NCBI GenBank assembly: GCA_002269645.1
Contig: NIVC01000556.1
Coordinates: 201,126-265,125, forward strand
Direction: 5' to 3'
DNA: 64,000 nucleotides
Source of the DNA: Macrostomum lignano
Taxonomy: Eukaryota
In this document: positions 26,497-53,384 of the stretch, one piece after another
Position numbering within the stretch: the first letter of the stretch is position 1
Layout of the letters: each line of letters begins with the position of its first letter
Made by a program: the position numbers and the translations under genes
Notes under the pieces: generated by a model
The model's database searches: none
What the model saw: only the letters and a program-made list of their open reading frames with translations
Told to the model about the DNA's origin: nothing

Positions 26497-29051
26497 CCGC
26501 CAGCAGTCTGATGGTAAGCAGTGCTTACCACGCTGACACTCCAATCCAAGCCTAAACTTTCGCGAGTGAGGAAAGTCTCTATAAGTCTATGGCTGGCCAC
26601 AGGCCGTTCTGGTCGGCTATGGTAAGCAGAGCTTGCCATACCAGGGTAGAATTGAAGTTAGGAAAATCAGATTGAGCAGCTCTTCAAAACTGTCTGTCTG
26701 TCTGTCTGTCTATTCAGCCATTAGGGGTCATGGACAAATATTTATTCAAAAAGGAACTAGCTTTACTTTTATCCTTCCAAATAAAAAATTTGTCATTTGC
26801 CTTTTATACCGCAGTTGGTTGAAATCTGCTACAGATTATTCACGGTCTGGAAACAACTCGACTGAAGAAAAAATCAAACGAAAAATATTTTAACAAAGTA
26901 AAACAAAAGTAAGCAGATCGTACAGATCGTACATTTAGATGCAAAAGTACTCCAAAACGCAAAAAATAACATTGTGATATGTGTTAGACAACTTTAAACT
27001 TTAAATAAACATAATAACTCAGTAAACTTACAAACTACATTAAAATAATACTGACTTGCATTATATTTTGACTAAGTTCCATTATATTTTGACTAAGTTC
27101 GAGTAAACAGTTGCCTTCAAATAGATTCATTAAGGCAGACTTAGTCCAAATCGCAGTCGAAGATCAGGCATGCCACTGCTGAAAGCAGGCTTCCAAGCAG
27201 AGCCCCGGTTCCCCTGGACACTCAGGGCAGCAGTAGATCGTGCGTTTGCTGCTTCCAGCTCTGTAGCAGACACGACAGCGCTTTGTTGGTCTTGGCTGAC
27301 TGTCCCGCGCCACAATCTTCGTTGGAAAGTGCGGACTGACTGGGCCACCTGGAGCGGCCTGGATGCCAGCGGCCGGGCGCTTCCTGCTCGTTCCGGTACG
27401 CTCCACCAGCTCCCGAATGCTGGCCTCAAGAAACTTGGCGAACGTCTTCTCTCCACCGCACCGGCTGTACACAATCCAAGCGTTGCGAATCATTTGAAGA
27501 AAAAGATGCAAGCCGAGCTTCAAAAACCACTTTGTAGTTTTCCTCCCTGGCAGATGAGGCTGTAGATGACTGTCCATTCTGTCAACACCACCCATGCACC
27601 GATTGTAGGTGAGAACTGACCTGCTCTTCTGCACCACTGTTTCTGCTCCTCCACGAACCACGCGTCTGGTTTGAACCCTCTCAGCCGCCTCTTTCGTGTT
27701 CAGCAAATACAGAGTCTTCAGGCCACTCTCCTTTCGTTCAACGATCTTGACAGCCAGCACCCCGTCTTTGCGCATGAAGGCGACGTCGTTAGGTGGAACG
27801 TGCAGCTGTCTAAGCTCAATCGGCACACCTCGGTCGGCCCGGACGGTACAAGTCAGGTGCGTTCCTTGAGTCAGCAGGTACTCTGACAGCCGATAGGAAC
27901 CGAACCATTTATCGACAAAGATGCGGTAGCCTTGGTGCAACAAGTTGTAGCAGAGCTCAACAACAATCTTCTCGCTGAAGGACAGATTGTCTCCCTGCAA
28001 CTGTTCATCGAACCGGCGGTTCTCCTCTGGGGTCGAGTGAACGCGGAAGTTGTACAGGTAGCCTGATTTGGCCTCACATGCACAATATAGCTTTATTCCG
28101 TACTTAGCCCGCTTCGTTGGAATATATTGCTTAAAGCGCAGGCGACCTTTGTACAGCACCAAAGACTCATCCACGCTCACATCCTCCTCGGGCCTGTACA
28201 CATTAATACAAGCCTCTTTCAAAGCCTGCAGCAACGGACGGATCTTAAAGAGAGGATCGTTGACAATCGGATCCTCAGCGCAATCGTAGAAACGGAGCAG
28301 ACCAAGTAGCTGCTTGAAGCGGTCCCTAGAGAGAGCTTGAGGTGCTTGAAAGTACGGCGTACTGTAGTAACTGTCTGTGCTCCAGTACTCGTTCATTTCG
28401 GCCTTTTTATTGGAACCCATGTAAAGGCACATTCCTAACACTTTCTTTACTTCATTCGCACTGCAATCTCTCCATTGCGCAAAACTCCGAGGCAGGTCGT
28501 CGACATTGACAGAGTGGATCGCCGCCCAGGCTCTTCGATTAGTCCATTTTGCCAGTTCTTCGAAAAGGCTATTGGACAAAAAAAGACCGAGAAAAAAGGA
28601 CGTTGCCTGCTCAACATCACCAGGTACGCAAATTCCTGGATTCAGTCCAGGTGTCCCTAGAAACTCGTGCACATTCGCTTGCACGTCATGCCCAGCAACT
28701 ACAGAATGCCAAGACAGCTCTTCCGTCTCTTCGGCAGTGCTGTGGCCGTCCGACTCACCATAATCGTCCTCTGACATGATGTCTTCTTCTTCATCGGACG
28801 TCATTAAGTCCGAATCGGAAAAACTTTCAAATTCTTCCATGAGTGCAGCCATAATCTTCAGCTGTAAAACTTTCTATGTTAGTTTATGGAGACTTAGTTT
28901 TGGGCCTTATTCATAGTCAATGTCTTTTTATCAGACTGGAATGACCACAGACTTAGCAAACCATTCTGCTGAAAGGAATAGTCTATGGTAAGCGCTGCTT
29001 ACCATCCGACCGGAACGGAGATGAATAAAATCCTCTTCAGTTCGGAAGAGG
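26497..29051 (-). mobile_element. Full-length piggyBac DNA transposon (2555 bp)
   Basis: TTAA at 26493-26496 and 29052-29055, with CC...GG termini. A palindromic internal repeat TGGTAAGC-nnn-GCTTACCA occurs near both ends. An empty-site homolog at about 35500-35545 confirms the boundaries. Confidence 0.9.
27164..28852 (-). CDS. piggyBac transposase (PGBD4-like), intact 562 aa
   Basis: Acidic N-terminus, DDD triad (VDESLVLYKG, FVDKWF, GGVDRMD), YIPTKRAKYGIK motif, and C-terminal cysteine-rich domain CRVC...CPEC...LCLEACFQQWH. Confidence 0.95.
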   Translation of the reverse strand: MAALMEEFESFSDSDLMTSDEEEDIMSEDDYGESDGHSTAEETEELSWHSVVAGHDVQANVHEFLGTPGLNPGICVPGDVEQATSFFLGLFLSNSLFEELAKWTNRRAWAAIHSVNVDDLPRSFAQWRDCSANEVKKVLGMCLYMGSNKKAEMNEYWSTDSYYSTPYFQAPQALSRDRFKQLLGLLRFYDCAEDPIVNDPLFKIRPLLQALKEACINVYRPEEDVSVDESLVLYKGRLRFKQYIPTKRAKYGIKLYCACEAKSGYLYNFRVHSTPEENRRFDEQLQGDNLSFSEKIVVELCYNLLHQGYRIFVDKWFGSYRLSEYLLTQGTHLTCTVRADRGVPIELRQLHVPPNDVAFMRKDGVLAVKIVERKESGLKTLYLLNTKEAAERVQTRRVVRGGAETVVQKSRSVLTYNRCMGGVDRMDSHLQPHLPGRKTTKWFLKLGLHLFLQMIRNAWIVYSRCGGEKTFAKFLEASIRELVERTGTSRKRPAAGIQAAPGGPVSPHFPTKIVARDSQPRPTKRCRVCYRAGSSKRTIYCCPECPGEPGLCLEACFQQWHA

Positions 29052-29652: not shown

Positions 29653-32614
<2,962 letters not shown>

Positions 32615-35489: not shown

Positions 35490-35685
35490 GGCCAGGGCCT
35501 GTGTGCACCTTGGCGCGCTTTAAGCAGCATTGTCACACAACCGGCGAGAGGCATTGCTGCCCATTCCGCCGACAGCGGCTCTAACTTTATTTATCGTTAG
35601 GCATGTACACTTCACTGTGCCTTGGGGGTTGGCCCTCAAAGGCGTTAATTGCACGAGCAGAGCCAAAGCCCCTGTCTCTTGGTTG
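35490..35685 (-). mobile_element. SINE family A copy (3' body), containing the empty piggyBac TTAA site
   Basis: The reverse complement matches 26290-26496 plus 29052-29075. It is truncated by the adjacent minisatellite. Confidence 0.7.
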
Positions 35686-36705
35686 GCGCCCAGTTGTATC
35701 TTGGTTGGCGCCCCCTGTCTCTTGGTTTGCGCCCCCCGTCTCTTGGTTTGGCGCCCCCCTGTCTCTTGGTGGGCGCCCCTGTCTCTTGGTGGGCGCCCCT
35801 GTCTCTTGGTTTGCGCCCCCCGTCTCTTGGTTTGGCGCCCCCCTGTCTCTTGGTTGGCGCCCCCTGTCTCTTGGTTTGCGCCCCCCGTCTCTTGGTTTGG
35901 CGCCCCCCTGTCTCTTGGTTTGCGCCCCCCGTCTCTTGGTTTTGCGCCCCCCTGTCTCTTGGTGGGCGCCCCTGTCTCTTGGTGGGCGCCCCTGTCTCTT
36001 GGTTTGCGCCCCCCGTCTCTTGGTTTGGCGCCCCCCGTCTCTTGGTGGGCGCCCCTGTCTCTTGGTGGGCGCCCCTGTCTCTTGGTTTGCGCCCCCCGTC
36101 TCTTGGTTTGGCGCCCCCCTGTCTCTTGGTTGGCGCCCCCTGTCTCTTGGTTTGCGCCCCCCGTCTCTTGGTTTGGCGCCCCCCTGTCTCTTGGTTTGCG
36201 CCCCCCGTCTCTTGGTTTTGCGCCCCCCTGTCTCTTGGTGGGCGCCCCTGTCTCTTGGTGGGCGCCCCTGTCTCTTGGTGGGCGCCCCCCGTCTCTTGGT
36301 TTGGCGCCCCCCGTCTCTTGGTTTGGCGCCCCCCTGTCTCTTGGTGGGCGCCCCTGTCTCTTGGTTTGCGCCCCCCGTCTCTTGGTTTGGCGCCCCCCGT
36401 CTCTTGGTTTGGCGCCCCCCTGTCTCTTGGTTTGCGCCCTCCGTCTCTTGGTTTGGCGCCCCCCTGTCTCTTGGTGGGCGCCCCTGTCTCTTGGTGGGCG
36501 CCCCCCGTCTCTTGGTTTGGCGCCCCCCTGTCTCTTGGTGGGCGCCCCTGTCTCTTGGTTTGCGCCCCCCGTCTCTTGGTTTGGCGCCCCCCTGTCTCTT
36601 GGTTTGCGCCCTCCGTCTCTTGGTTTGGCGCCCCCCTGTCTCTTGGTGGGCGCCCCTGTCTCTTGGTGGGCGCCCCTGTCTCTTGGTGGTCGCCCCTGTC
36701 TCTTA
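35672..36705. repeat. GC-rich ~20-22-bp minisatellite TGTCTCTTGGT(T/G)(T/G)GCGCCCCCC
   Basis: About 50 tandem units. They generate several spurious 370-410-aa ORFs. Confidence 0.95.
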
Positions 36706-36982
36706 GGCTGCGTCATGGTTGCCAGAGGTTTCTCCTGACATTCGTCGAAGCCATGCATGCAGTTTCTATCTGTTTACATGCTTTTATTTCATTTGGCAAA
36801 TAATGCAACACCCTGCAATATTAAACGCAGCTAAAGTAGCCTATTGGAGAAGAGAACATTCGCCAATCAGAAAAAGCATGCCTACAGGTATTAAGTCATT
36901 AATCCCACTATATATAGAAACGTCTACGCCGATAAACGAGAGAGCGCTCAGCTTTAAATCCCTACCAATTGCTGGTATAGTA

Positions 36983-40832: not shown

Positions 40833-43800
40833 TCATTCATCATCCCCAGCAGCCAAAAGCTGCATCGCATCCTCTGGAGACACATTTCTTCCCGTGAGCA
40901 CAACGCACAGACCCCCCACTGGAGGCTGCTCCAGCCGGTCAAATAGCAGAGCCGCTAGTCCAGCGCAGGCGCTCGGCTCCACAATCAGGCCGAGGTTGCG
41001 CGCCAGCTGGCGCTGACAGGCGCCAATTTCGGCGTCGCTAACTAGCAGCGAGCGAGCGCCAAAATGGCGCAAATGTCGGTAGGCGTTGGCGCCGGCGTAG
41101 GGTGGCGCCAGGCCGCCAGCTATGGATCGCGCCTGCGGCATCAAGGCTGGCCGATCCTGGATGAGAGGTCGGGTTCCATTGTGCACTGACACAGGCTGCT
41201 CACAACCTTGACCCAGAATGCTCACACACTTGACCCAGGCTGCTCACACACTGATGACACAGACTGCTCACAACCTTGAACCAGACTTCTCACAACATTG
41301 ACCCAGACTGCTCACACCCTTAATACAGACTGCTCATACCCTTGAACTAGACTGCTCATACCCTTGACCCAGACTACTCACAACCTTGACCCAGACTACT
41401 CACAACCTTGACCCAGACTACTCACAACCTTGACCCAGACTACTCACAACCTTGACCCATACTACTCACACCCTTGACCCAGACTGCTCACACACCCTTA
41501 ACCAAGACTGCTCACACACCCTTAACCAAGACTGCTCACACACCCTTGACCAAGACCGCTCACACACCCTTAACCAAGACTGCTCACACACCCTTAACCA
41601 AGACTGCTCACACACCCTTAACCAAGACTGCTCACACCCTTAACCAAGACTGCTCACACACCCTTAACCAAGACTGCTCACACACCCTTAACCAAGACTG
41701 TTCACACACCCTTAACTAAGACTGCTCACACACCCTTAACCAAGACTGTTCACACACCCTTAACTAAGACTGCTCACACACTTGACCCAGACTGCACACA
41801 CTTTTGACACAGATTGCTTACACCCACCTCAACCTCCATGTCAGCCACCCCAACCTCCATCTCACCCACCTTACCTCCTTGTCACCCACCACAACCTTCA
41901 TCTCACCTACCCCAGCCTCCATGTCAGCCACCCCAACCTCCATGTCAGCCACCCCAACCTCCATGTCAGCCACCCCAACCTCTATCTCACCCATCCCAAC
42001 CTCCATGTCACCCACCCCAACCTCCATTTCACCCACCCCAACCTCCATGTCACCCACTCCAACTTCTATATTACCCACCTCAACCTCCATGTCAGCCACC
42101 CCAACCTCCATCTCACCCACCTTACCTCCTTGTCACCCACCACAACCTTCATCTCACCTACCCCAGCCTCCATGTCAGCCACCCCAACCTCCATGTCAGC
42201 CACCCCAACCTCCATGTCACCAACCCCAACCTCTATCTCACCCATCCCAACCTCCATGTCACCCACCCCAACCTCCATTTCACCCACCCCAACCTCCATG
42301 TCACCCACTCCAACTTCTATATTACCCACCCCAACCTCAATGTCACCCACACCAACTTCCATATCACCCACCCCAACCTCCATGTCACCCACTCCAACTT
42401 CTATATTACCCACCCCAACCTCAATGTCACCCACACCAACTTCCATATCACCCACCCCAACCTCCATGTCACCCACTCCAACTTCTATATTACCCACCCC
42501 AACCTCAATGTCACCCACACCAACTTCCATATCACCCACCCCAACCTCCATGTCACCCACCCCAACCTCCATGTCACCCACCCCAACCTCCATGTCACCC
42601 ACCCCAACCTCCATGTCACCCACTCCAACTTCTATATTACCCACCCCAACCTCAATGTCACCCACACCAACTTCCATATCACCCACCCCAACCTCCATGT
42701 CACCCACCCCAACCTCCATGTCACCCACCCCAACTTCAATGTCACCCACCCCAACCTCAATGTCACCCACACCAACTTCCATGTCACCCACCCCAACCTC
42801 AATGTCACCCACACCAACTTCCATATCACCTACCCCAACCTCCATGTCACCCACCCCATTCCCCAACCTGTTCAAAGCTCAGCCGCATAGTACAAGCTGT
42901 TTCAGGCTCCACAGCGTACACGACAGGAGATCGCGGTTCTTCATCAGCCGAGCGGCCATTTTCATGCAGCCGAGATTTCGAGGACAAAGCTAAGGCGGCC
43001 GCAACCCCAGCTGAGAGGCCGCCGCCACCGCAGCCAAGTAGAACAGTGTCAACCTTGAACGAATTTGTTTAAATCGATTTAAAAACAGGAGTACATGTAA
43101 TTTGCGCTCACTGCCATTGTCAGTAGACAAAAAAGGACATGCTAGACTGCATATATAGACTTCTAAGCAATTCTTATCCAACCCGTACCTGAGACAGCTG
43201 TTCCAGCAGTTCGAGACCCAAACTGGCGTGTCCGGCAATCAGTGGCCGATCATCGAACGGGTGCAGGAACTGGTAGCCTTCGTTGGCCACCTTGGCGTCA
43301 ACGCGTGACTGCAGCTCGGAACTGGGGCAGGTCTCCACTAGGACGCCTTGGCTCTGGTAAGGAGATAGATATGATAATAATTCCAGTCTGCCTCCTGAGC
43401 ATGAATACTTAAAAGCGCGCCAATACTGCACTGCACAGGGTGTTCAGCGGCCCTGACTTTCTAATCGTCAGGCATGTGCACTCTCTGTGCCTTGGGGGCT
43501 GGCCCTCCTGGGCTGTCAATCGCAGACAGAAAGACAGACAAAACAAAAAGACAGACACCCAGACACTAAGACAACAGACAGACAGACAGACGGACACACA
43601 GACAGACAGACACTAAGACAGACAGGCAGACAGACACTACGACAGACACTAAGACAGACAGGCAGACAGACACTACGACAGACAGACAGACAGACAGACA
43701 CTACGACAGACAGACAGACAGACATTACGACAGACAGATAGACAGACACTACGACAGACAGACAGACAGACACTACGACAGACAGACAGACAGACACTAA

Positions 43801-44414
43801 GACAGACAGGCAGACCGACAGACAGACAGACACACAGACAGACACTACGACAGACAGACAGACACTAAGACAGACAGGCAGACCGACACAACGACAGACA
43901 GACAGACAGACAGACAGAGACAGAAAGACAGACAGACAGACAGACAGACAGGCAGGCAGACAGACACACAGAAAGACAGACAGGCAGACAGACACTACGA
44001 CAGACAGGCAGACAGACACAGCAGGCTCACCCGGATGTGATCAACCCGGTGCCGCGGAGCAGAGTCTGGCATCAGCACCAGGCCGTGAAGGCGCCGAGCT
44101 TGGCAGACGGCAGCAAAGGAGCGGCCGTAGTTGCCAGCCGACATTGTCACCAGCTTGGGGCCGCTGCCGGCGCCAGTCAACCCGGCGAGCTGCACGGCCA
44201 GACCCCGCGGTTTAAACGAGCCGGTCAGCTGGGCGCACTCCAGCTTCAGGTGCAAACGGTAGCCAACATCGGCGGGCAGGCCCAGCAGTTGCGGATCAAC
44301 GTCAGTTAAAATTGGGGTACGACGGATTAAACCGGAGCTTTGAACTGTTGCGTAGGCGTCTGACAGGTCATTTAAGGTCAATAGTGGAGCATCTGGGTTG
44401 TAGGCGGCAGCCAT
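40833..44414 (-). CDS. PLP-dependent serine/threonine dehydratase (fold type II), about 352 aa
   Basis: Phase-0 exons 44414-44031, 43353-43189, 43053-42868 and 41156-40833. Motifs: RRTP, KLECAQLTGSFKPRG (PLP lysine), SAGNYG, HPFDD, GCGGGGL, VEP, SIAGGL, EPSACAGLAAL, TGRN. Confidence 0.9.
41200..41810. repeat. 22-24-bp minisatellite CCTTAACCAAGACTGCTCACACAC (intronic)
   Basis: Tandem units visible directly. Confidence 0.9.
41815..42860. repeat. 21-bp minisatellite CCACCCCAACCTCCATGTCAC (intronic)
   Basis: Tandem units visible directly. Source of the spurious mucin-like TSMSPTP ORFs. Confidence 0.93.
43520..44020. repeat. (GACA)n-derived microsatellite (intronic)
   Basis: Visible directly. 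It is preceded by a partial SINE A fragment at about 43410-43515. Confidence 0.93.
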
Positions 44415-45750: not shown

Positions 45751-45971
45751 TCTATAAGAGAAATAAAAATTTAGTAAGTAATAGCAAGCGATACAATTGT
45801 CATTTAATCGCTAATCAAGTTAAAAAACGAATTTTGTATAAATTGAGTGAAGTTTTCACCATAAGATTGATTGTCCGTCCGACGATGGGAATAACCAACC
45901 TTTGTCCTTGGTCGTTATAAATAAAATATACTAAATAAAGTGGCAGCCTGAGTGCAAAATGGAAGTGGCTT

Positions 45972-46236
45972 TTAAGCAGCCGATTCAGTCTGATTTAAAT
46001 TTTCCACGCGTCTGATGAGATCCGTTGGTGCCTCGCCGAGTTTCAGGAACACCAGACGACTGCTTCTGTGATGCAATGCATTCAATTCCTTGCAGTATTC
46101 TTTTAATCTGTTTCCGAACTCCAGCATGTTCTCAGTCTGAAATTTATTGGTTTCAAGACAGATTCGATCATTTTAAATTGAGGAGACACTTGGGTACAAT
46201 GGTTGACAGACAGACAGACAGTCAGACAGACATACT

Positions 46237-46286
<50 letters not shown>

Positions 46287-46289
46287 TAC

Positions 46290-46338
<49 letters not shown>

Positions 46339-47190
46339 GACAGACAGACAGACAGACAGGCAGACAGACAGACAGACAGACACACAGACAGACACACAGA
46401 CACAAAGCCGTCCTGACTCACGATATTCGGCATGGCAACCAGCACATCAGGCCGCAGAGCTGCCCGGCGCCGCTTCAGCAAGCCTCTTACAGCCGACCGC
46501 AGAGGCCGATAGTTCACCAAGCGAGGCGAAGCAAAAATTAAAATCCGTCTATAATGATTATTATCGCACTGGACAGACCGCCTATCCGTGACCACTCTGA
46601 AATGATCGCCATCTGGCTGACTGAGCCAACTGGATGGAAAATAGTCCTGACTGTCCTCAGGACAGCAAACGATTAGATAAGCCGGTTGATTCCCCCGATT
46701 TTGCTGCTGCTGCTGCTGCTGCTGCGGAAGCAGACTGGAATAAGTACCTTCATCGGCTTCTTCTTCTTCACTTTCTGCTGGAGCCGGTGGAAGCTGCCTG
46801 CCATGCTGTTGCTGCTGCTGCTGCTGCTGCTGCTGTTGTTGTTGTTGTTGTTGATGACGGCCCAGCTGGGTCACCTGGTCATTGGGCCTACGGGAACGGT
46901 CTGACTGCAACATGGCACAGCCAGCCGTCTTTGTCCCGCTCACCATAGGACAGGGGCCTTGCACCACCGCGTCGCCGCGTGAGTGTGCAGAGGGCATGTC
47001 GGCGAGCCTGCCACCAGGTCCACCAGGGTCTACCCCAGCAGAGGGGCCGTTATTCCAGCTTTCGTGTCCGTGGCCAGCGGACCTTCCACCCCACGCCTGA
47101 CAGTCCAGCACTGGCGGCCAGCCCCGATGGGGTCTAGCCAGTGTCTGGAGCTGCTCGGAGGCCTGCTGGATGTGAGGCTGCTGCTGCTGC

Positions 47191-47244
<54 letters not shown>

Positions 47245-47277
47245 TGCTGTGGCTGCTGCTGTTGCTGCTGTTGCTGC

Positions 47278-47321
<44 letters not shown>

Positions 47322-50300
47322 CTGGGACACTGATAGATTAACACCGTAACTAAGATTGGCCATTTGAAAGGAGCCCGGATTCAGCTGAGCATCCGAGCCC
47401 AGACTGTGTCGGTCGTTGTCGTTCAAATTGTTTCGATCGCGACGATTATTGCCATTGTTGTTGCTATGGTAGCGGCCTCTTTCACCATTGGCCTCGATAC
47501 TTCTGTTGGTTGTAGTGAAGTTTCGGGATGTAGTAGTGAAGTTTCGGGATCGTAGTGAAGTTTCGGGATTGTAGTGAAGTTTCGGGATTGTAGTGAAGTT
47601 TCGGGATTGTAGTGAAGTTTCGGGATTGTAGTAGTGATGTTTCGGGATTGTACAATAGTAGTGAAGTTTCGGGATTGTAGTAGTGATGTTTCGGGATTGT
47701 ACAATAGTAGTGAAGCTTCGGGATTGTAGTGAAGTTTCGGGATTGTAGTGAAGCTTCGGATTGTAGTGAAGCTTCGGGATTGTAGTGAAGCTTCGGGATT
47801 GTAGTGAAGCTTCGGGATTGTAGTGAAGTTTCGGGATGTAGTAGTGAAGTTTCGGGATTGTAGTGAAGTTTCGGGATTGTAGTGAAGTTTCGGGATTGTA
47901 GTGAAGTTTCGGGATTGTAGTGAAGTTTCGGGATTGTAGTGAAGTTTCGGGATTGTAGTGAAGCTTCGGGATTGTAGTGAAGCTTCTGGATTGTAGTGAA
48001 GCTTCGGGATTGTAGTGAAGCTTCGGGATTTAAGTGGAAGTTTCGGATATGAAGTGAATTAACTCACTCTCTACTAACTGCAGACCAACATCGCCTTTTC
48101 CCTGTCCTCCAACAGTAGGCGATGAGGAATAAAACGATCAGAGATGCTAACACTACACCGACAACCACGCCGACAATGGCACCGTTAGAAGTCGGTACCG
48201 GAGAGGCTTCTGCTGCCTGACAGGGGCAACCAGCCAGACTTTGCTTAGCGGCCACCTAAAATATTAATTTACAAGAACAGGTAAAATCTTTAGTTTTTGT
48301 TGTGGTAATTTAGTAAACTAGTAATCTCTAGTAATTAAAAATACGATTTGCTTCTTCATCTAGACACAGGTACAACTTTTTCCACAATCCGAAAATTGGG
48401 ATTTATAATTTGGGATTTAAATACTGTGGGGAATCATATAATTTGGGATTTGAATATTGTTGGGATTCATATAATTTGGGATTTGAATATTGTTGGGATT
48501 CATATAATTTGGGATTTGAATATTGTTGGAATTCATATAATTTGGGATTTGAATATTGTTGGGATTTATAATTTGGGATTATGAATACGGTAGACAGTTC
48601 CAACAATGACCGCATGAAATTCCATACCTCGGGAGATTCAGTAGTCTTCGTTTTCTTTGGATAACTTAAAAACAATTTTTGCAAACTTGGCACGCACAGG
48701 CAGGTGACTGGTGTTGCCAGGCTGTTGCCATGCAGTTTGAGCTCTTTCAGATGCTTCAGATAAGCAAGCCGCTCCGGTTGAATAGCCGTCAGTTTGTTTT
48801 TTTGTAAGTCCAGAATTCTGTCGGGAAAGGAAAAATAGAAAATTGAGGATAACAGGGAATTCAGATTAGTTATTACAGGGGAATTCAGACAGGTTATGAG
48901 TATGACAGGGGAATTCAGATTAGTAACGACAGAGGAATTCAGACAGGTTGCGACAGGGGAATTCAGGCAGGTTGCGACAGGGGAATTCAGGCAGGTTGCG
49001 ACAGGGGAATTCAGACAGGTTATGACAGGGGAATTCAGACAGGTTATGACAGGGGAATTCAGACAGGTTATGACAGGGGAATTCAGACAGGTTATTACAG
49101 GGGAATTCAGACAGATTATGACAGGAGAATCCAGACTGGTTCTGACAGGGGAATTCAGACAGGTTATGACAGGGGAATCCAGGCTGGTTATAACAGGGGA
49201 ATCCAGTACTCACTCTAGCATATTCGGCAGATTGTTGGGAATCTCAGTAAATTCGTTGCCCCTCAAACTCAAGGTCATGAGTTGGTTTGGCAGCGGTGTT
49301 AGACCGCCACTGTTGGTCAATCCGCAGACTTCCAATCGCAGATGTCTGAGCCCTGACAGACTCGAAAAACAGCCTATAGTTGGTCCACTGTCATCCGACA
49401 TCAATTTGAGATCAATTATATTTGACAGCTCCAATGAGGCTAGAGTTTTGGTCCAGGCAAATTTAGACATATCGGAGCACATCAGCTTGGCGCCCTGGCT
49501 GAATCTTTGCAGACTGAGCGAGCTTAGTTGTCGAAGCGATTTGGTGGCCGCCAGAGCGGTATAGAAATGCATTGATAATCTGGAGTTGAGTTTGTAGAAT
49601 TAAAGTTCAACATGAACTTGCTGTATTAAAAATGCGACTCTTGTCTATTATAATTGAAGGGGAATTACGTAGCTAATGGGATGAATGGGAAAGTAGTGTA
49701 TGGGATAAGTGGGGAATTAGAGTATAGGATAAATAGGATATTAGTATATGGGATAAATGGGGAATAAGTGTATGTGATAAATAGGGAATTAGTGTATGGG
49801 ATAAATAGAGAATTAAGTGTATCGGATAAGTGAGGAATCAGAGTATGGGATAAGTGGGGAATTAGTGTATGGGATAAATGGGGAATTAGTGTGTGGAATA
49901 AATAGTGAATTAGTCTACTAGGATATAACAGCAGGAAATAAGTCTATTAGGAGAGAATTTGGTATTAGTATATTAGGATATAAATTATAATAGTGTAGTA
50001 AGCCGCTAGTTTAGCTGTTAGGCGTCCAGCCGTTTTCCTTGCCCACAGCTTTCTACTTTCAGTTCAGTAGAGCAAAGAAGAATACATAAGCTATTTTATA
50101 AAAAAAGGCAGCTGAAACGACTGATAAGTTTAGAAACCCAACGAGCTTGCAGGCGCAAACAACTTGCTAATTGGTTCAGCAATAATGTACATTGGCCAGT
50201 CCAGTGAAATGTACATGGCAGCTTTAGGCTGGAATTCCAAGAAAGGCAATAAAAATTTGGGCGGAGCGGGGGTTGGAGGGTTTAAGCTGGGGTTAAGAGC

Positions 50301-51320
50301 CAATAAATGAGCCTTGGCTTGAAAAATACATTAAAATGCTTTGGTTCAACTTACTACTGAACTGAAAGTAGCTTACACGCATATTGTGCTGAGTGGGCCC
50401 ATCTAGTATATGTGCCAAATCCTAACAGATGCTAACACCGCCCTCCCCCCGACACCTTATTCGTTACTCTGAAAAGTAATGAGAGGAAAATAAATGTCCA
50501 ATAAATTGTAATCAGTTACTTACCTAGTAGATTTTTTCAAATTTGCTGGCAAACTAATGTGTAAACTAGTCAAGCTAGCAGCTACAGAATTCAGCTCAAT
50601 AGAATCCAATGGCAAAGTTTTACAAGTCAATGCTTGCAGCTTAGCTGGTAGACAGGCCGATTTAATTTTTTTTAATTTAGAGTTGGAGCTCAATGTTAAT
50701 GATTTTAATTCAGCTGAAGTGCTAGCAACGAACTCTGGCAGGCTGCAGTCTTGCAATAGATTAGCAGCCAGAGTGAGCTTAGTAACATGCTTCGGCAGTC
50801 TAATATTCGGTATTCGAACTAGTTTATTAGACGATATGTGCAAAGATTGCAAGTTCGGTAGAGAATCGACAATAGCATCAGGCGGTAGCCCAGCATCTGT
50901 CAGAGCGTTATTATCCAGGATTAGACTTGTAAGTCCGCTAAGACCTTCAAATGAATCTTTAGCTATTGACGTTATTCCGCAGCCAATCAGCATCAACTTG
51001 AATAGGCCATCAATAGACCGGCCAGCGAAGGCTCTCGGCTGCAAAGCGCCCAGCCCGTCTACCGGGCAGCCGCACAGTCGAGCGTGACGACACGACGAGG
51101 GGAAAGTGACTAATGGTTGAGGCTTAGTCTCAGACGATGATGAAGAAGACTCAACAGATGAAGGATTGGCTGGTCTACAGAGACAGGTTGAACTGCCAGT
51201 GGGGTGGATGCACGTGCCAGGCGAAATAATTGATAGATCGTCAGGACAGGCGCTTTGACTGCTGATGCCACTGGCTAAGATTGCCAGGGCCATTACTGTA
51301 AGACTTGATATGGCCGGCAT
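45972..51320 (-). CDS. LRR type I membrane receptor, about 928 aa (signal peptide, LRRs, TM, polyQ linker, possible divergent TIR/SEFIR-like C-terminal domain)
   Basis: Six phase-consistent exons: 51320-50524, 49579-49214, 48817-48628, 48255-48068, 47502-46422, 46136-45972. LRRs include [42 protein letters not shown] and [14 protein letters not shown] cap; [25 protein letters not shown] followed by RTGKRR. Confidence 0.8.
46200..46405. repeat. (GACA)n microsatellite filling the last intron of the LRR gene
   Basis: Visible directly. Confidence 0.95.
47510..48050. repeat. ~19-bp minisatellite GGGATTGTAGTGAAGTTTC (intronic)
   Basis: Tandem units visible directly. Confidence 0.92.
48395..48580. 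repeat. 33-bp minisatellite (intronic)
   Basis: ATTTGGGATTTGAATATTGTTGGGATTCATATA repeated about 5 times. Confidence 0.9.
48850..49200. repeat. 24-bp minisatellite GACAGGGGAATTCAGACAGGTTAT (intronic)
   Basis: About 14 tandem units. Confidence 0.9.
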
Positions 51321-51359
51321 TGTAGGCTGGAGAATTTCAATGAAGTAAGTAATAAGCTG

Positions 51360-51745
51360 TTTTTAGGCGATTCTATGGGCGATTTTTAATAAGGCGATTC
51401 TATGGGGCGATGCGATGGGCGATTTTATAGGCTATTGTTAAAAAGCGAGTCTATGGGGCGATTCTATGGGCGATTTTAAAAAAATAAGGCGATTCTATTG
51501 GAGACTTTTAATAAGGCGATTCTACGGGCGATTATGATATAAAGCGATTCTAAGGGGGATTTTATGGGCGGTTTTAAAAATAAGGCGATTCTATGGGCGA
51601 TTTTAAAAATAAGGCGATACTATCGGCGATTTTAAAAAGCGATTCCAAGGTTCGATTTAAAAAAGGGATTCTATGAGCAATTTTTAATAAGGCGATTCTA
51701 TGGGCGATTTTAAGATTGGGCGATTTTATGGGGCGATTTTTAAAG
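51360..51745. repeat. Degenerate GGCGATT(C/T)TATGG repeat array upstream of the LRR gene
   Basis: About 20 recurrences of GCGATT with variable A/T spacers. Confidence 0.7.
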
Positions 51746-52074: not shown

Positions 52075-53384
52075 CTAGCCGTCCCGATTTCGTCGACTCC
52101 ACCAGGCTTTTAATCGACCAATCAGAGACGACAGAAACGATGCTCGATTACTATTGGCTGGCGGGCGCCACAGACCCAAACGACGTCTTTTGGCTTCATT
52201 CTCGGCCACTTCCAGTCTATCCAACAGGGCCTTCCAATGCTGACTGTTGCTGTTCTCTATCTCAGAATATTCAGCATCGAGATGGCAACGCTGAGCTAAG
52301 CCGCTAGCAACCAGCTGTTCAGCGATGCACCGATAACTCAACGGATGCCAAGACATTAATCGCCATTGAAAAATTGCGCACAGACCAACTGTATCGTTGC
52401 TAACCAACTGTAACACTCGAACTCGAACTATTCGATTAGTGAGTCGATTTTGCAACCAATTTAAACCTTCAGGCGTCAGCTTGTTCAAGCCGGCTAGTCT
52501 GAGTTTCAACAAGTCTGAAGAACTGTCCTGCTTGCGATTGCGTAACAATATAGGCAGAGTAAACAGTACAGGCTCGTGCTTAGCAACTAATTCAACCGGC
52601 ACTGGATCTGTTGAACAGTCACAGCGTTGGACTCGGACACGAAATGCCCATTGGCCGGAGCGAACCTCGGCTGGCAGGCTCGCAAGGCTGCGCCATCTGA
52701 CTAGCCAGTACCGACGCCTGGCTAGCGTGAGCAAGCCGATGACGCCCAGACCAGCTGGCACTTTCTGTGCAGCACAGAATTGGGTGAGCACTTGAATGTG
52801 AGTTGCATATTTCTTTTTTTATCTACCTAATATACGTTTATTATATTCCAGTTTAGCCTCCAAATTAATGCGACTGCACTTGGAATCGAACCTGGGCTGC
52901 TGGCACATCAGAGCACTGCACTAGACCACCAGGCTACAGCCCCTCATATGTAGCCTAGTGGTTTGGATGTTGGACTCACGACTGAAAGGTCAGGAGTTTG
53001 AGTCTCGACCCACTCGGAACAATTTGTGTCCTTAAACAAGACACTTAACTCTGCATTGCTTCAGTTCACCCAGCTACATATTTTACAGCTGGGTAAACTG
53101 AAGGTGTCAGCATTAGCTAGGGTAATTGAGGGTGTGTGTGGCAACCCCCTAGTCCTTGGATTGAACAGCCATATTTTTAATATCTAGAGGTTAGATTTGA
53201 TCCCAAATCCACTATACTATAAATGAGTTGTTTGTATCTAGGTATTTATATTTATAATACTAGAATAGTTAATGAATAGTATTAGATACATTATTCCTGA
53301 CTAGTTTAAAAACATTCAACTTACAGAAATCCATGAAATATTGTTGTCAATGGTAGTATAGATATCATCTATCCAAGAACGCAT
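52075..53384 (-). CDS. C3orf33: C3orf33-like protein (staphylococcal-nuclease-like fold, N-terminal hydrophobic anchor), about 249 aa
   Basis: Exon 53384-53325 (MRSWIDDIYTTIDNNISWIS, gtaag donor) and exon 52764-52075. HEPVLFTLP, LRLAGL, GLNWLQ, EQLVASGLA and AENEAKRRRLGLW recall C3orf33/SNase C-terminal motifs. Confidence 0.72.
52855..52943 (-). mobile_element. SINE family A 5' fragment (tRNA-like head)
   Basis: Reverse strand reads GGGGCTGTAGCCTGGTGGTCTAG...CCCAGGTTCGATTCCAAGTGCAGTC. Confidence 0.75.
52949..53170 (+). mobile_element. SINE family B, copy 2
   Basis: Collinear with 37372-37600. It carries a local foldback inversion at 53059-53103. Confidence 0.8.

What the first reader, a model, noticed from the sequence alone, without database searches (positions are those of the whole stretch)
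45972..51320. LRR-TM-polyQ receptor ending in a possible divergent TIR/SEFIR fold (Toll-like architecture)
Seen: six exons splice in frame into about 928 aa with signal peptide, about a dozen LRRs, a Cys cap, one TM, a long polyQ linker and a ~140-aa C-terminal domain. That domain alternates hydrophobic strands and helices: [10 protein letters not shown] / FRVVTDRR / [12 protein letters not shown] / DVLVAM / RLVFLKL. Inference: this order recalls TIR betaA-betaE (YDxFISY, FxxxxDxRD, SRRxIxxxSPxF), but the BB-loop Pro and the WCxxE motif are missing. Canonical TLRs are generally reported as lacking in flatworms, so if the host is a flatworm this could be an overlooked TLR-like receptor. The ORF track alone does not reveal it.
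Basis: partly seen in the sequence, partly recalled or inferred. Interest (0 to 1): 0.72.

Follow-up and report, generated by a model that had tools for sequence, protein, structure and literature searches.

The report
Orphan-tailed LRR membrane receptor, not a TLR
The six-exon gene for a leucine-rich-repeat membrane protein with a glutamine-rich tail is really there, but its C-terminal module failed the TIR/SEFIR tests that a genuine TIR control passed, so it is best read as a lineage-restricted receptor-like protein with an orphan tail and not as a hidden Toll-like receptor.

Summary
Observation confirmed. On the minus strand, six exons with GT..AG borders join in frame into 928 aa: signal peptide, two Cys clusters, 13 LRRs, a CxC...CxC cap, one TM helix, three polyQ tracts and a 142-aa C-terminal module.

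Interpretation partly supported. The LRR-TM architecture holds; the TIR/SEFIR reading does not.
- Pfam, PADLOC, NCBIfam and PDB sequence searches found nothing for the module.
- An exhaustive HMMER scan of 1.84 billion representative proteins gave only one hit, a translated tandem repeat.
- A single-sequence AlphaFold model (pLDDT 54) gave no TIR/SEFIR among the 50 listed Foldseek matches (best E=1.5).
- A true TIR folded the same way, at the same confidence (pLDDT 57), recovered MyD88, L6/L7, RRS1 and other TIR structures.
- My own 14-sequence TIR HMM gave 3.8 bits on one strand-like segment (p about 0.005 against real protein windows). This fell to 0.2 bits with a broader profile, while the control TIR scored 12-32 bits.
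- Box 2, box 3 and the βE/αE elements are absent.

A neighbouring Smad gene places the host as sister to trematodes plus cestodes. The exon 4-5 junction is unproven without RNA evidence. Residual chance of a relic TIR: about 10%.

The parts
50524..51320 (-). Exon 1 (aa 1-266, phase-2 end). It holds the start ATG, the signal-like segment (51320-51252), Cys cluster 1 (51248-51177), a Ser-rich linker (51161-51129), Cys cluster 2 (51092-51066) and the first seven or so LRRs.
   Evidence: Pfam LRR_8 E=7.8e-21. Donor GTAAGT.
49214..49579 (-). Exon 2 (aa 266-388): irregular and canonical LRRs 7-11.
   Evidence: Acceptor ...CTCCAG, donor GTGAGT.
48628..48817 (-). Exon 3 (aa 388-451): LRRs 12-13 and the first CxC of the C-terminal cap.
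   Evidence: Acceptor ...CGACAG, donor GTATGG.
48068..48255 (-). Exon 4 (aa 452-514): the second CxC of the cap, the TM helix (48180-48109) and the RTGKRR stop-transfer (48108-48091). An in-frame TGA overlaps the donor, so an unspliced transcript would end at ...AVSRE.
   Evidence: Kyte-Doolittle peak 3.2 at residue 478.
46422..47502 (-). Exon 5 (aa 514-874): N/R-rich juxtamembrane stretch, polyQ1 (47324-47178), a Gly/Pro-rich region with no family match, polyQ2 (46856-46803), an acidic run (46775-46749), polyQ3 (46727-46698) and the first 88 aa of the C-terminal module (46685-46422).
   Evidence: Only the annotated frame is open between the acceptor and M559. Codon score is best of six frames.
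45972..46136 (-). Exon 6 (aa 875-928 plus TAA): the last 54 aa of the C-terminal module.
   Evidence: Acceptor ...ATTTCAG. It is the only stop-free frame and has the best codon score.
45975..46685 (-). C-terminal orphan module (aa 787-928; spans intron 5). It is predicted to be mixed strand and helix. It has no detectable sequence homologue and no TIR/SEFIR match.
46137..46421 (-). Intron 5, made up almost entirely of a (GACA)n microsatellite (46205-46402).
47503..48067 (-). Intron 4, made up entirely of a 19-bp minisatellite (47510-48058). This is the junction that links the LRR/TM half to the polyQ/C-terminal half, and it is unverified.

Best explanation
This is a lineage-restricted type-I membrane protein of the 'LRR-only, TLR-like / adhesion-type' kind.

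Shown from the sequence:
- A secreted-type N-terminus.
- A Cys-capped solenoid of 13 leucine-rich repeats facing outward.
- One transmembrane helix.
- A 428-aa cytoplasmic tail. Most of it is low-complexity (N/R-rich, three polyQ tracts, a Gly/Pro-rich stretch, an acidic run). It ends in a 142-aa Arg-rich module predicted to contain strands and helices.

Inferred mechanism:
- The LRR solenoid binds an extracellular ligand or a partner on another cell.
- The Q-rich tail acts as a flexible, possibly self-associating spacer.
- The terminal module is a taxon-specific docking domain for cytoplasmic partners.

The terminal module is not a demonstrable TIR or SEFIR domain. If the protein feeds into immune signalling at all, it would more plausibly do so in trans. 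The precedent is the Hydra LRR-only plus TIR-only receptor pair cited in PMC8609888 and PMC7958881.
For: Gene model and architecture. Coding frame support for the last two exons.

No homologue of the module:
- Word-indexed search of 5.8 billion proteins found none.
- Exhaustive phmmer of 1.84 billion representatives gave a single hit, which is a translated tandem repeat.
- The JGI metagenome scan found none, and there is no paralogue in the window.
- The ectodomain finds only generic LRR proteins (FLRT-like, LGR4; best E=1.4e-9, 27% identity). The only hit carrying a TIR domain is the bacterial LRR-Roc-TIR protein P0005, which matched through its LRRs; no Toll-like receptor is among them.

TIR/SEFIR tests negative:
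- Pfam, PADLOC, NCBIfam and PDB phmmer found nothing. The TLR2 TIR used as a control found 41 PDB TIR sequences.
- hhalign gave probability 1.15% and 0.33%.
- Foldseek's best match was E=1.5, probability 0.14, with no TIR/SEFIR in the 50 listed matches. The control TIR, at equal pLDDT/pTM (57.1/0.54 against 54.2/0.54), recovered about 20 TIR structures in its top 50.
- The control TIR scored 12-32 bits against every TIR panel, where this module scored -1.5 to 3.8 bits.

Literature: flatworms lack TLRs but do have LRR-only TLR-like proteins (PMC8609888; PMC7958881).
Against: - A pre-specified HMM of 14 metazoan TIRs gave 3.8 bits (E=0.0027 for one sequence). The empirical p was 0.0013 against shuffles and 0.005 against 1022 real protein windows. 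The alignment put [11 protein letters not shown] on the TIR βD strand.
- Smith-Waterman against TLR1 extends this colinearly over 68 residues (p=0.07), and against TLR2 p=0.013. A very faint TIR-like echo therefore cannot be excluded.
- The AlphaFold model is low-confidence, so the fold is unknown.
- A truly divergent TIR might also fail the Foldseek control test.
- There is no RNA evidence for the exon 4-5 junction.
- No function has been tested.
Confidence: 0.6

Rival explanations
1. Relic or extremely divergent TIR. The tail module descends from a TLR TIR domain that has lost αA, the BB-loop Pro, box 3 and βE/αE. On this reading the gene is an overlooked TLR-derived receptor in a flatworm.
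For: - The LRR-TM-globular tail architecture fits.
- The 14-TIR HMM gave 3.8 bits, with p about 0.005 against real protein windows.
- The Smith-Waterman alignment to TLR1 is colinear from the BB-loop to βD.
- The relaxed hhalign alignment is colinear from βA to αD.
- Flatworm proteins evolve fast.
Against: - The signal drops to 0.2 bits (p=0.046) with a broader profile, and to p=0.02-0.15 with sub-panels.
- hhalign probability is about 1%.
- The TLR2 and TLR1 alignments use incompatible registers.
- Box 2 and box 3 are absent.
- In the best register, the most strongly predicted strand (RRILIFAS) falls in an insertion, and the domain ends before βE.
- Foldseek found no TIR, whereas the control did.
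- No homologue exists in any other proteome, including those of trematodes and cestodes.
Confidence: 0.1
2. Two genes joined by the model. Exons 1-4 encode an LRR-TM protein with a 14-aa tail, ending at the TGA that overlaps the exon 4 donor. Exons 5-6 form a separate Q-rich soluble protein starting at M559.
For: - The exon 4 reading frame hits TGA exactly at the donor.
- Intron 4 is entirely a 19-bp minisatellite, and its acceptor has a weak pyrimidine tract.
- An in-frame ATG (MANLSYG...) lies 45 codons after the acceptor.
- A matching phase has a one-in-three chance of arising by accident.
Against: - The phase matches.
- The 45 codons between the acceptor and M559 are open only in the joined frame.
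- Donor GTGAGT and acceptor CAG match the gene's other introns.
- All the other introns are also filled with minisatellites, so that feature is not special to intron 4.
Confidence: 0.17
3. SEFIR (IL-17 receptor/Act1-type) domain on an LRR receptor.
Against: - No Pfam SEFIR match.
- A small SEFIR HMM, built from three sequences recalled from memory and not verified, produced no alignment at all.
- No SEFIR structure appears among the listed Foldseek matches.
- The βB-βC spacing is about 10 aa, against about 25 aa in SEFIR (my knowledge of the family).
Confidence: 0.02
4. The 3' exons are not a functional domain. They could be a decaying or recently arisen coding tail next to expanding repeats, with chance open frames.
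For: - No homologue anywhere.
- The region is flanked by polyQ tracts and a (GACA)n repeat.
- The AlphaFold confidence is low.
- The neighbouring Smad gene shows an apparent 1-nt frameshift, so assembly errors or decay do occur in this window.
Against: - Both pieces are open only in the annotated frame, which also has the best codon score.
- The splice sites are strong.
- pTM is 0.54, equal to that of the genuine TIR control.
Confidence: 0.08

Closest known systems
Toll-like receptors (LRR-TM-TIR)
   Same: Type-I topology, a Cys-capped LRR ectodomain, a single TM helix, and a compact module at the cytoplasmic C-terminus.
   Different: - No TIR by profile, by motif or by fold search.
- Only 13 LRRs.
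- No Pfam LRRNT/LRRCT match.
- About 285 aa of low-complexity, polyQ-rich linker lies between the TM helix and the module. In TLRs the TIR follows the TM helix closely (my knowledge of the family).
- The ectodomain's best matches are FLRT and LGR4, not TLRs.
LRR-only 'TLR-like' membrane proteins (Hydra HyLRR type; vertebrate CD180/RP105)
   Same: LRR ectodomain plus TM helix without a TIR domain. This class is reported to be present in flatworms, which lack TLRs (PMC8609888). It can signal in trans with TIR-only proteins (PMC7958881).
   Different: Those proteins have short tails. This one carries a 428-aa tail with polyQ tracts and an orphan terminal module. No orthology was shown.
Neuronal/adhesion LRR-TM proteins (FLRT, LRRTM, Slitrk, Drosophila Capricious/Tartan)
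   Same: Type-I LRR proteins with family-specific cytoplasmic tails that have no known domain. The best database hit is a vertebrate FLRT-like protein (P0002, E=1.4e-9).
   Different: Only 27% identity, and only over generic LRRs. There is no FN3 domain. The tails are unrelated. The ectodomain has no N-glycosylation sequons.
IL-17 receptor / Act1 SEFIR domain
   Same: A cytoplasmic α/β signalling module of the STIR superfamily that lacks the TIR BB loop.
   Different: No profile or fold match. IL-17 receptors have FnIII-like ectodomains, not LRRs (my knowledge of the family).

Membership tests
Toll-like receptor | Extracellular LRR domain (at least one LRR) | tested here: met
   Pfam LRR_8 7.8e-21, LRR_4 4.8e-12, LRR_1 2.3e-8. 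13 repeats counted.
Toll-like receptor | Single transmembrane helix, type-I orientation | tested here: met
   One hydrophobic peak at residues 477-500, followed by RTGKRR. N-terminal signal-like segment.
Toll-like receptor | Intracellular TIR domain recognised by a TIR profile (PF01582 / PF13676) | tested here: not met
   - No Pfam hit for three different constructs. The control TIR gave TIR_2 5.4e-16 and TIR 2.1e-8.
- My own TIR HMMs gave -1.5 to 3.8 bits, against 12-32 bits for the control.
- hhalign probability 1.15%.
TIR domain | Box 1 (F/Y)DAF(I/V)SY, box 2 RDxxPG with the BB-loop Pro, box 3 FW | tested here: not met
   AYLIVCC is only a vague box-1 look-alike. A pattern scan found no box 2-like and no FW motif in the tail.
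TIR domain | Flavodoxin-like five-strand parallel sheet with five helices (βA-αA ... βE-αE) | tested here: inconclusive
   - The AlphaFold single-sequence model has pLDDT 54.
- It shows no helix between the first three strand-like segments.
- Foldseek listed no TIR match, while an equal-confidence model of a true TIR did recover TIRs.
- The evidence leans negative, but the model is too poor to settle the fold.
SEFIR domain (IL-17R/Act1) | Match to the SEFIR profile (PF08357) | tested here: not met
   No Pfam hit. A three-sequence SEFIR HMM (sequences from memory, unverified) gave no alignment.
LRR-only TLR-like / generic LRR type-I membrane protein | Signal peptide + LRR ectodomain + TM helix, no TIR | tested here: met
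   This is a descriptive class, not a monophyletic family.
LRR-only TLR-like / generic LRR type-I membrane protein | Transcript actually joins the LRR/TM exons to the tail exons | not testable with these tools
   There is no RNA data. The genome is absent from the protein and contig collections.

The most novel reading that the evidence does not exclude
The tail module is a relic of a TLR TIR domain, truncated after βD and without a BB loop, or else a functionally equivalent new signalling fold that replaced the TIR. Either way, a flatworm lineage thought to have lost TLRs would still have a cis-linked LRR-to-cytoplasmic-module receptor.
Probability: 0.1. Interest if true: 0.75.

Novelty: new member of a known kind. 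Interest (0 to 1): 0.27.

Why it matters
Flatworms are reported to lack TLRs, and how they sense microbes is an open question (PMC8609888, PMC7958881). A cryptic TLR would therefore be notable.

The evidence here argues against that reading. What remains is a taxon-restricted LRR receptor-like gene whose tail module has no detectable relative among 1.84 billion representative proteins. That gives it modest interest as a candidate lineage-specific receptor or adhesion molecule.

It is also a useful caution. A strand/helix pattern read by eye can mimic the TIR order without any statistical support.

Tried and rejected
- **Exact-protein look-ups.** I looked up the exon 1 ORF, the piggyBac ORF and the capsid-like ORF to identify the genome. 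None is on record.
- **Metagenome scan.** The scan with the module matched 204 patterns, but none encodes a relative.
- **Representative-protein hit P0001** (E=1e-13). It is a translated tandem repeat, so I rejected it as spurious.
- **Other libraries.** PADLOC, NCBIfam and PHROGs gave nothing. Rfam gave nothing at gathering thresholds over the window.
- **Other folds.** Weak Foldseek matches to CpaE receiver-like, XPF/ERCC1/Mus81 and RNase H domains suggested alternatives, such as a β-β-β-α-β-α-β-α RNase-H-like order. All have probability 0.14 or lower and TM about 0.3 or lower, and I saw no catalytic motif in the sequence, so I did not pursue them.
- **Short motifs in the tail.** These include a TRAF6-like PAESEE at 755 and an ITIM-like VNYRPL at 843. 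They are too short to carry weight.
It was not reproduced. Smith-Waterman and hhalign place RILIFAS, DVLVAM and RLVFLKL either at βB/βC/βD or, in the case of RILIFAS, inside an insertion. TLR2 aligns to a different, incompatible part of the module.
Full report
**1.

Translating the minus strand of 45900-51400 shows six open segments. They join through canonical sites.
- Exons: 51320-50524, 49579-49214, 48817-48628, 48255-48068, 47502-46422 and 46136-45972.
- Donors: GTAAGT, GTGAGT, GTATGG, GTGAGT, GTGAGT. Every acceptor ends in AG.
- The phases are compatible.

Each of the five introns contains a tandem repeat of its own. Introns 2, 4 and 5 consist almost entirely of repeat.

**2. Anatomy of the protein**

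From:
- Signal-like hydrophobic N-terminus (residues 1-23).
- Cys cluster 25-48, a Ser-rich linker, then Cys cluster 77-85.
- 13 LRRs between residues 106 and 432 (Pfam LRR_8 7.8e-21, LRR_4 4.8e-12, LRR_1 2.3e-8).
- A C427xC429...C461xC463 cap. It does not match the Pfam LRRNT/LRRCT models.
- One TM helix (477-500), followed by RTGKRR.
- An N/R-rich stretch, polyQ 574-622, a Gly/Pro-rich stretch, polyQ 730-747, an acidic run at 757-765 and polyQ 773-782.
- A 142-aa Arg-rich terminal module (787-928) that is split by intron 5.

The ectodomain has no N-x-S/T sequon at all. Shuffles of the same sequence give 3.8 on average, with P(0)=0.013.

**3. Are the last two exons coding?**

For the module part of exon 5 and for exon 6, the annotated frame is the only one of six without stops. 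It also scores best under a codon model trained on the Smad, PALP and F5/8-C exons of the window, with or without exons 1-4 of this gene. Exons 1-3 behave the same way.

The 45 codons between the exon 5 acceptor and the first internal Met are open only in the joined frame. This supports the model but does not prove it.

The exon 4 frame reaches TGA exactly at the donor. A two-gene alternative therefore remains possible: an LRR-TM protein with a 14-aa tail, plus a separate Q-rich protein starting at M559. I give this 0.17.

**4. Relatives**

The module has none that I could detect.
- The word-indexed search of 5.8 billion proteins found nothing at E<=1.
- The exhaustive phmmer scan of 1.84 billion representatives returned one hit, a translated tandem repeat.
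- The JGI metagenome scan found nothing, and the window holds no paralogue.
- The ectodomain plus TM helix finds only generic LRR proteins. The best is a vertebrate FLRT-like protein at E=1.4e-9 and 27% identity, followed by LGR4 and plant receptor-like proteins (RLPs). No TLR is among them.

The genome itself is not in the collections.

For the host, the neighbouring Smad1/5-type gene has its best named matches in cestodes and trematodes (73-78% identity). In an NJ tree over 353 ungapped columns, the window is sister to trematodes plus cestodes. The host is therefore probably a flatworm outside those two classes. This rests on one gene and is weak evidence.

**5. Is the module a TIR or a SEFIR? 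Sequence tests**

- Pfam at E<=10 gave nothing for the 182-aa tail, for the exon 5 part alone, or for the rest of the tail.
- PADLOC and NCBIfam gave nothing.
- PDB phmmer gave only apolipoprotein-like noise at E about 0.4.

Controls:
- The TLR2 TIR found 41 PDB TIR sequences, reaching as far as MyD88, SIGIRR, TIRAP and Hydra TRR2.
- The bacterial TIR of P0005 hit Pfam TIR_2 at 5.4e-16.

HMMER's filters hide matches above E of about 0.1. I therefore ran a targeted test with those filters switched off.
- I built an HMM from 14 metazoan TIRs. Nine were verified against PDB. Five came from memory and are unverified.
- The module scored 3.8 bits, E=0.0027 for one sequence. The alignment covered only query 109-142, on the end of αC and the βD strand.
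- Empirical p was 0.0013 against 3000 shuffles. It was 0.005 against 1022 real 147-aa windows cut from non-TIR ORFs of 45 bacterial loci.

The signal is not robust.
- Adding 28 bacterial TIRs lowered it to 0.2 bits (p=0.046).
- Sub-panels gave 0.9, 1.1, -1.1 and -1.5 bits (p=0.02 to 0.15).
- The distant bacterial control TIR scored 12-32 bits with every panel.
- hhalign gave probability 1.15% (P=0.046) against the 14 TIRs, and 0.33% against a three-TIR alignment.
- Smith-Waterman against TLR2 aligns query 17-59 to βC-βD (p=0.013). Against TLR1 it aligns query 63-130 to the BB-loop through βD (p=0.07). These two registers are incompatible.
- No box 2 and no box 3 motif is present.
- A small SEFIR HMM gave no alignment at all.

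**6. Is the module a TIR or a SEFIR? Fold test with a control**

The single-sequence AlphaFold model of the module has pLDDT 54.2 and pTM 0.54.
- Strands: 8-14, 50-57 and 86-88.
- Helices: 65-76, 97-113 and 130-146.
- Residues 18-43 are essentially unmodelled.

Foldseek against PDB gave 76 matches at E<=10. The best was E=1.5 with probability 0.14 (a CpaE receiver-like domain). No TIR or SEFIR appears among the 50 listed.

A weak model could explain that result. I therefore folded a genuine TIR (P0005, which has no solved structure of its own) in the same way.
- It came out at the same confidence: pLDDT 57.1, pTM 0.54.
- Foldseek still returned MyD88, L6/L7, RRS1, AbTir, ThsB, Roq1 and SPARTA TIR domains, among others. 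That is about 20 of the top 50. The best TIR match was E=0.017 with probability 0.85, and there were 1053 matches at E<=10.

The negative result for the module is therefore informative. It is not decisive, because a TIR with no residual sequence signal might also fail this pipeline.

**7. Verdict**

The LRR / TM / polyQ receptor-like architecture is real. The TIR/SEFIR identity of the tail fails every membership test that a true TIR passes.

What remains is one faint, panel-dependent similarity around a single strand. I put a relic TIR at about 0.10 and SEFIR at about 0.02.

The best description is an LRR-only, TLR-like or adhesion-type membrane protein with a lineage-specific tail. Surveys of flatworms report this class as present while TLRs proper are absent (PMC8609888; PMC7958881).

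The proposed mechanism is inference, not shown:
- The solenoid binds a ligand or a partner on another cell.
- The Q-rich spacer is flexible or self-associating.
- The terminal module docks cytoplasmic partners.
- Any Toll-pathway link would be in trans.

**8. Novelty and interest**

This is a new member of a known kind, with an orphan terminal module. Interest is low to moderate (0.27). It would rise sharply only if orthologue-based profiles or a structure revealed a TIR-derived fold.

Noticed in passing
window 46137-50523 (introns 1-5 of the gene): Every intron carries its own tandem repeat: 24-bp units at 49676-49914 and 48855-49206, a 33-bp unit at 48396-48587, a 19-bp unit at 47510-48058, and (GACA)n at 46205-46402. 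Introns 2, 4 and 5 are almost nothing but repeat. The first Smad intron and the intergenic spacers show the same habit.
   Followed up: partly
window 56897-63570: A cluster of intact ORFs on both strands that look viral or Polinton-like. A 428-aa ORF (57784-59070, minus strand) has a weak double-jelly-roll capsid match (Pfam DJR-like, E=7e-5, below the family cut-off). A 220-aa ORF (61150-61812) has a Walker-B-like LIVFDD motif, which I read by eye. PHROGs gave no hits.
   Followed up: partly
window 27164-28852 (-): An intact 562-aa piggyBac-type transposase ORF (Pfam DDE_Tnp_1_7 6.6e-70, plus the zinc finger). It is not on record in the contig collection.
   Followed up: partly
window 29662-32614 (+), site near 30602-30629: A Smad1/5-type gene (MH1, Q-rich linker, MH2 ending in SSVS). 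The reading frame appears to shift by one base in a C-run between ...PVLPPVLVP and RYSEYP.... This could be a homopolymer assembly error or a real frameshift.
   Followed up: partly
window 51252-48180 (ectodomain, aa 24-476): The 456-aa ectodomain segment tested (aa 23-478) has no N-x-S/T glycosylation sequon, despite 20 Asn and 21% Ser+Thr. Shuffles give 3.8 on average, with P(0)=0.013. This is unusual for an extracellular LRR domain.
   Followed up: yes
window 35520-36803: A GC-rich (55%) tandem repeat that stays open for about 370-410 codons in four reading frames, one on the minus strand and three on the plus strand. These are repeat-derived pseudo-ORFs.
   Followed up: no
window 40833-44414 (-) and 41782-43072: A PLP-dependent (PALP, serine/threonine dehydratase-like) gene lies directly downstream on the same strand. 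One of its introns holds a long repeat that reads as PTSMSPT.../HPNLHVT... in several frames.
   Followed up: no
window 52075-52791 (-): A 238-aa ORF about 750 bp upstream of the receptor's ATG, on the same strand. It has no Pfam match and is probably the neighbouring gene's last exon or a single-exon gene.
   Followed up: no
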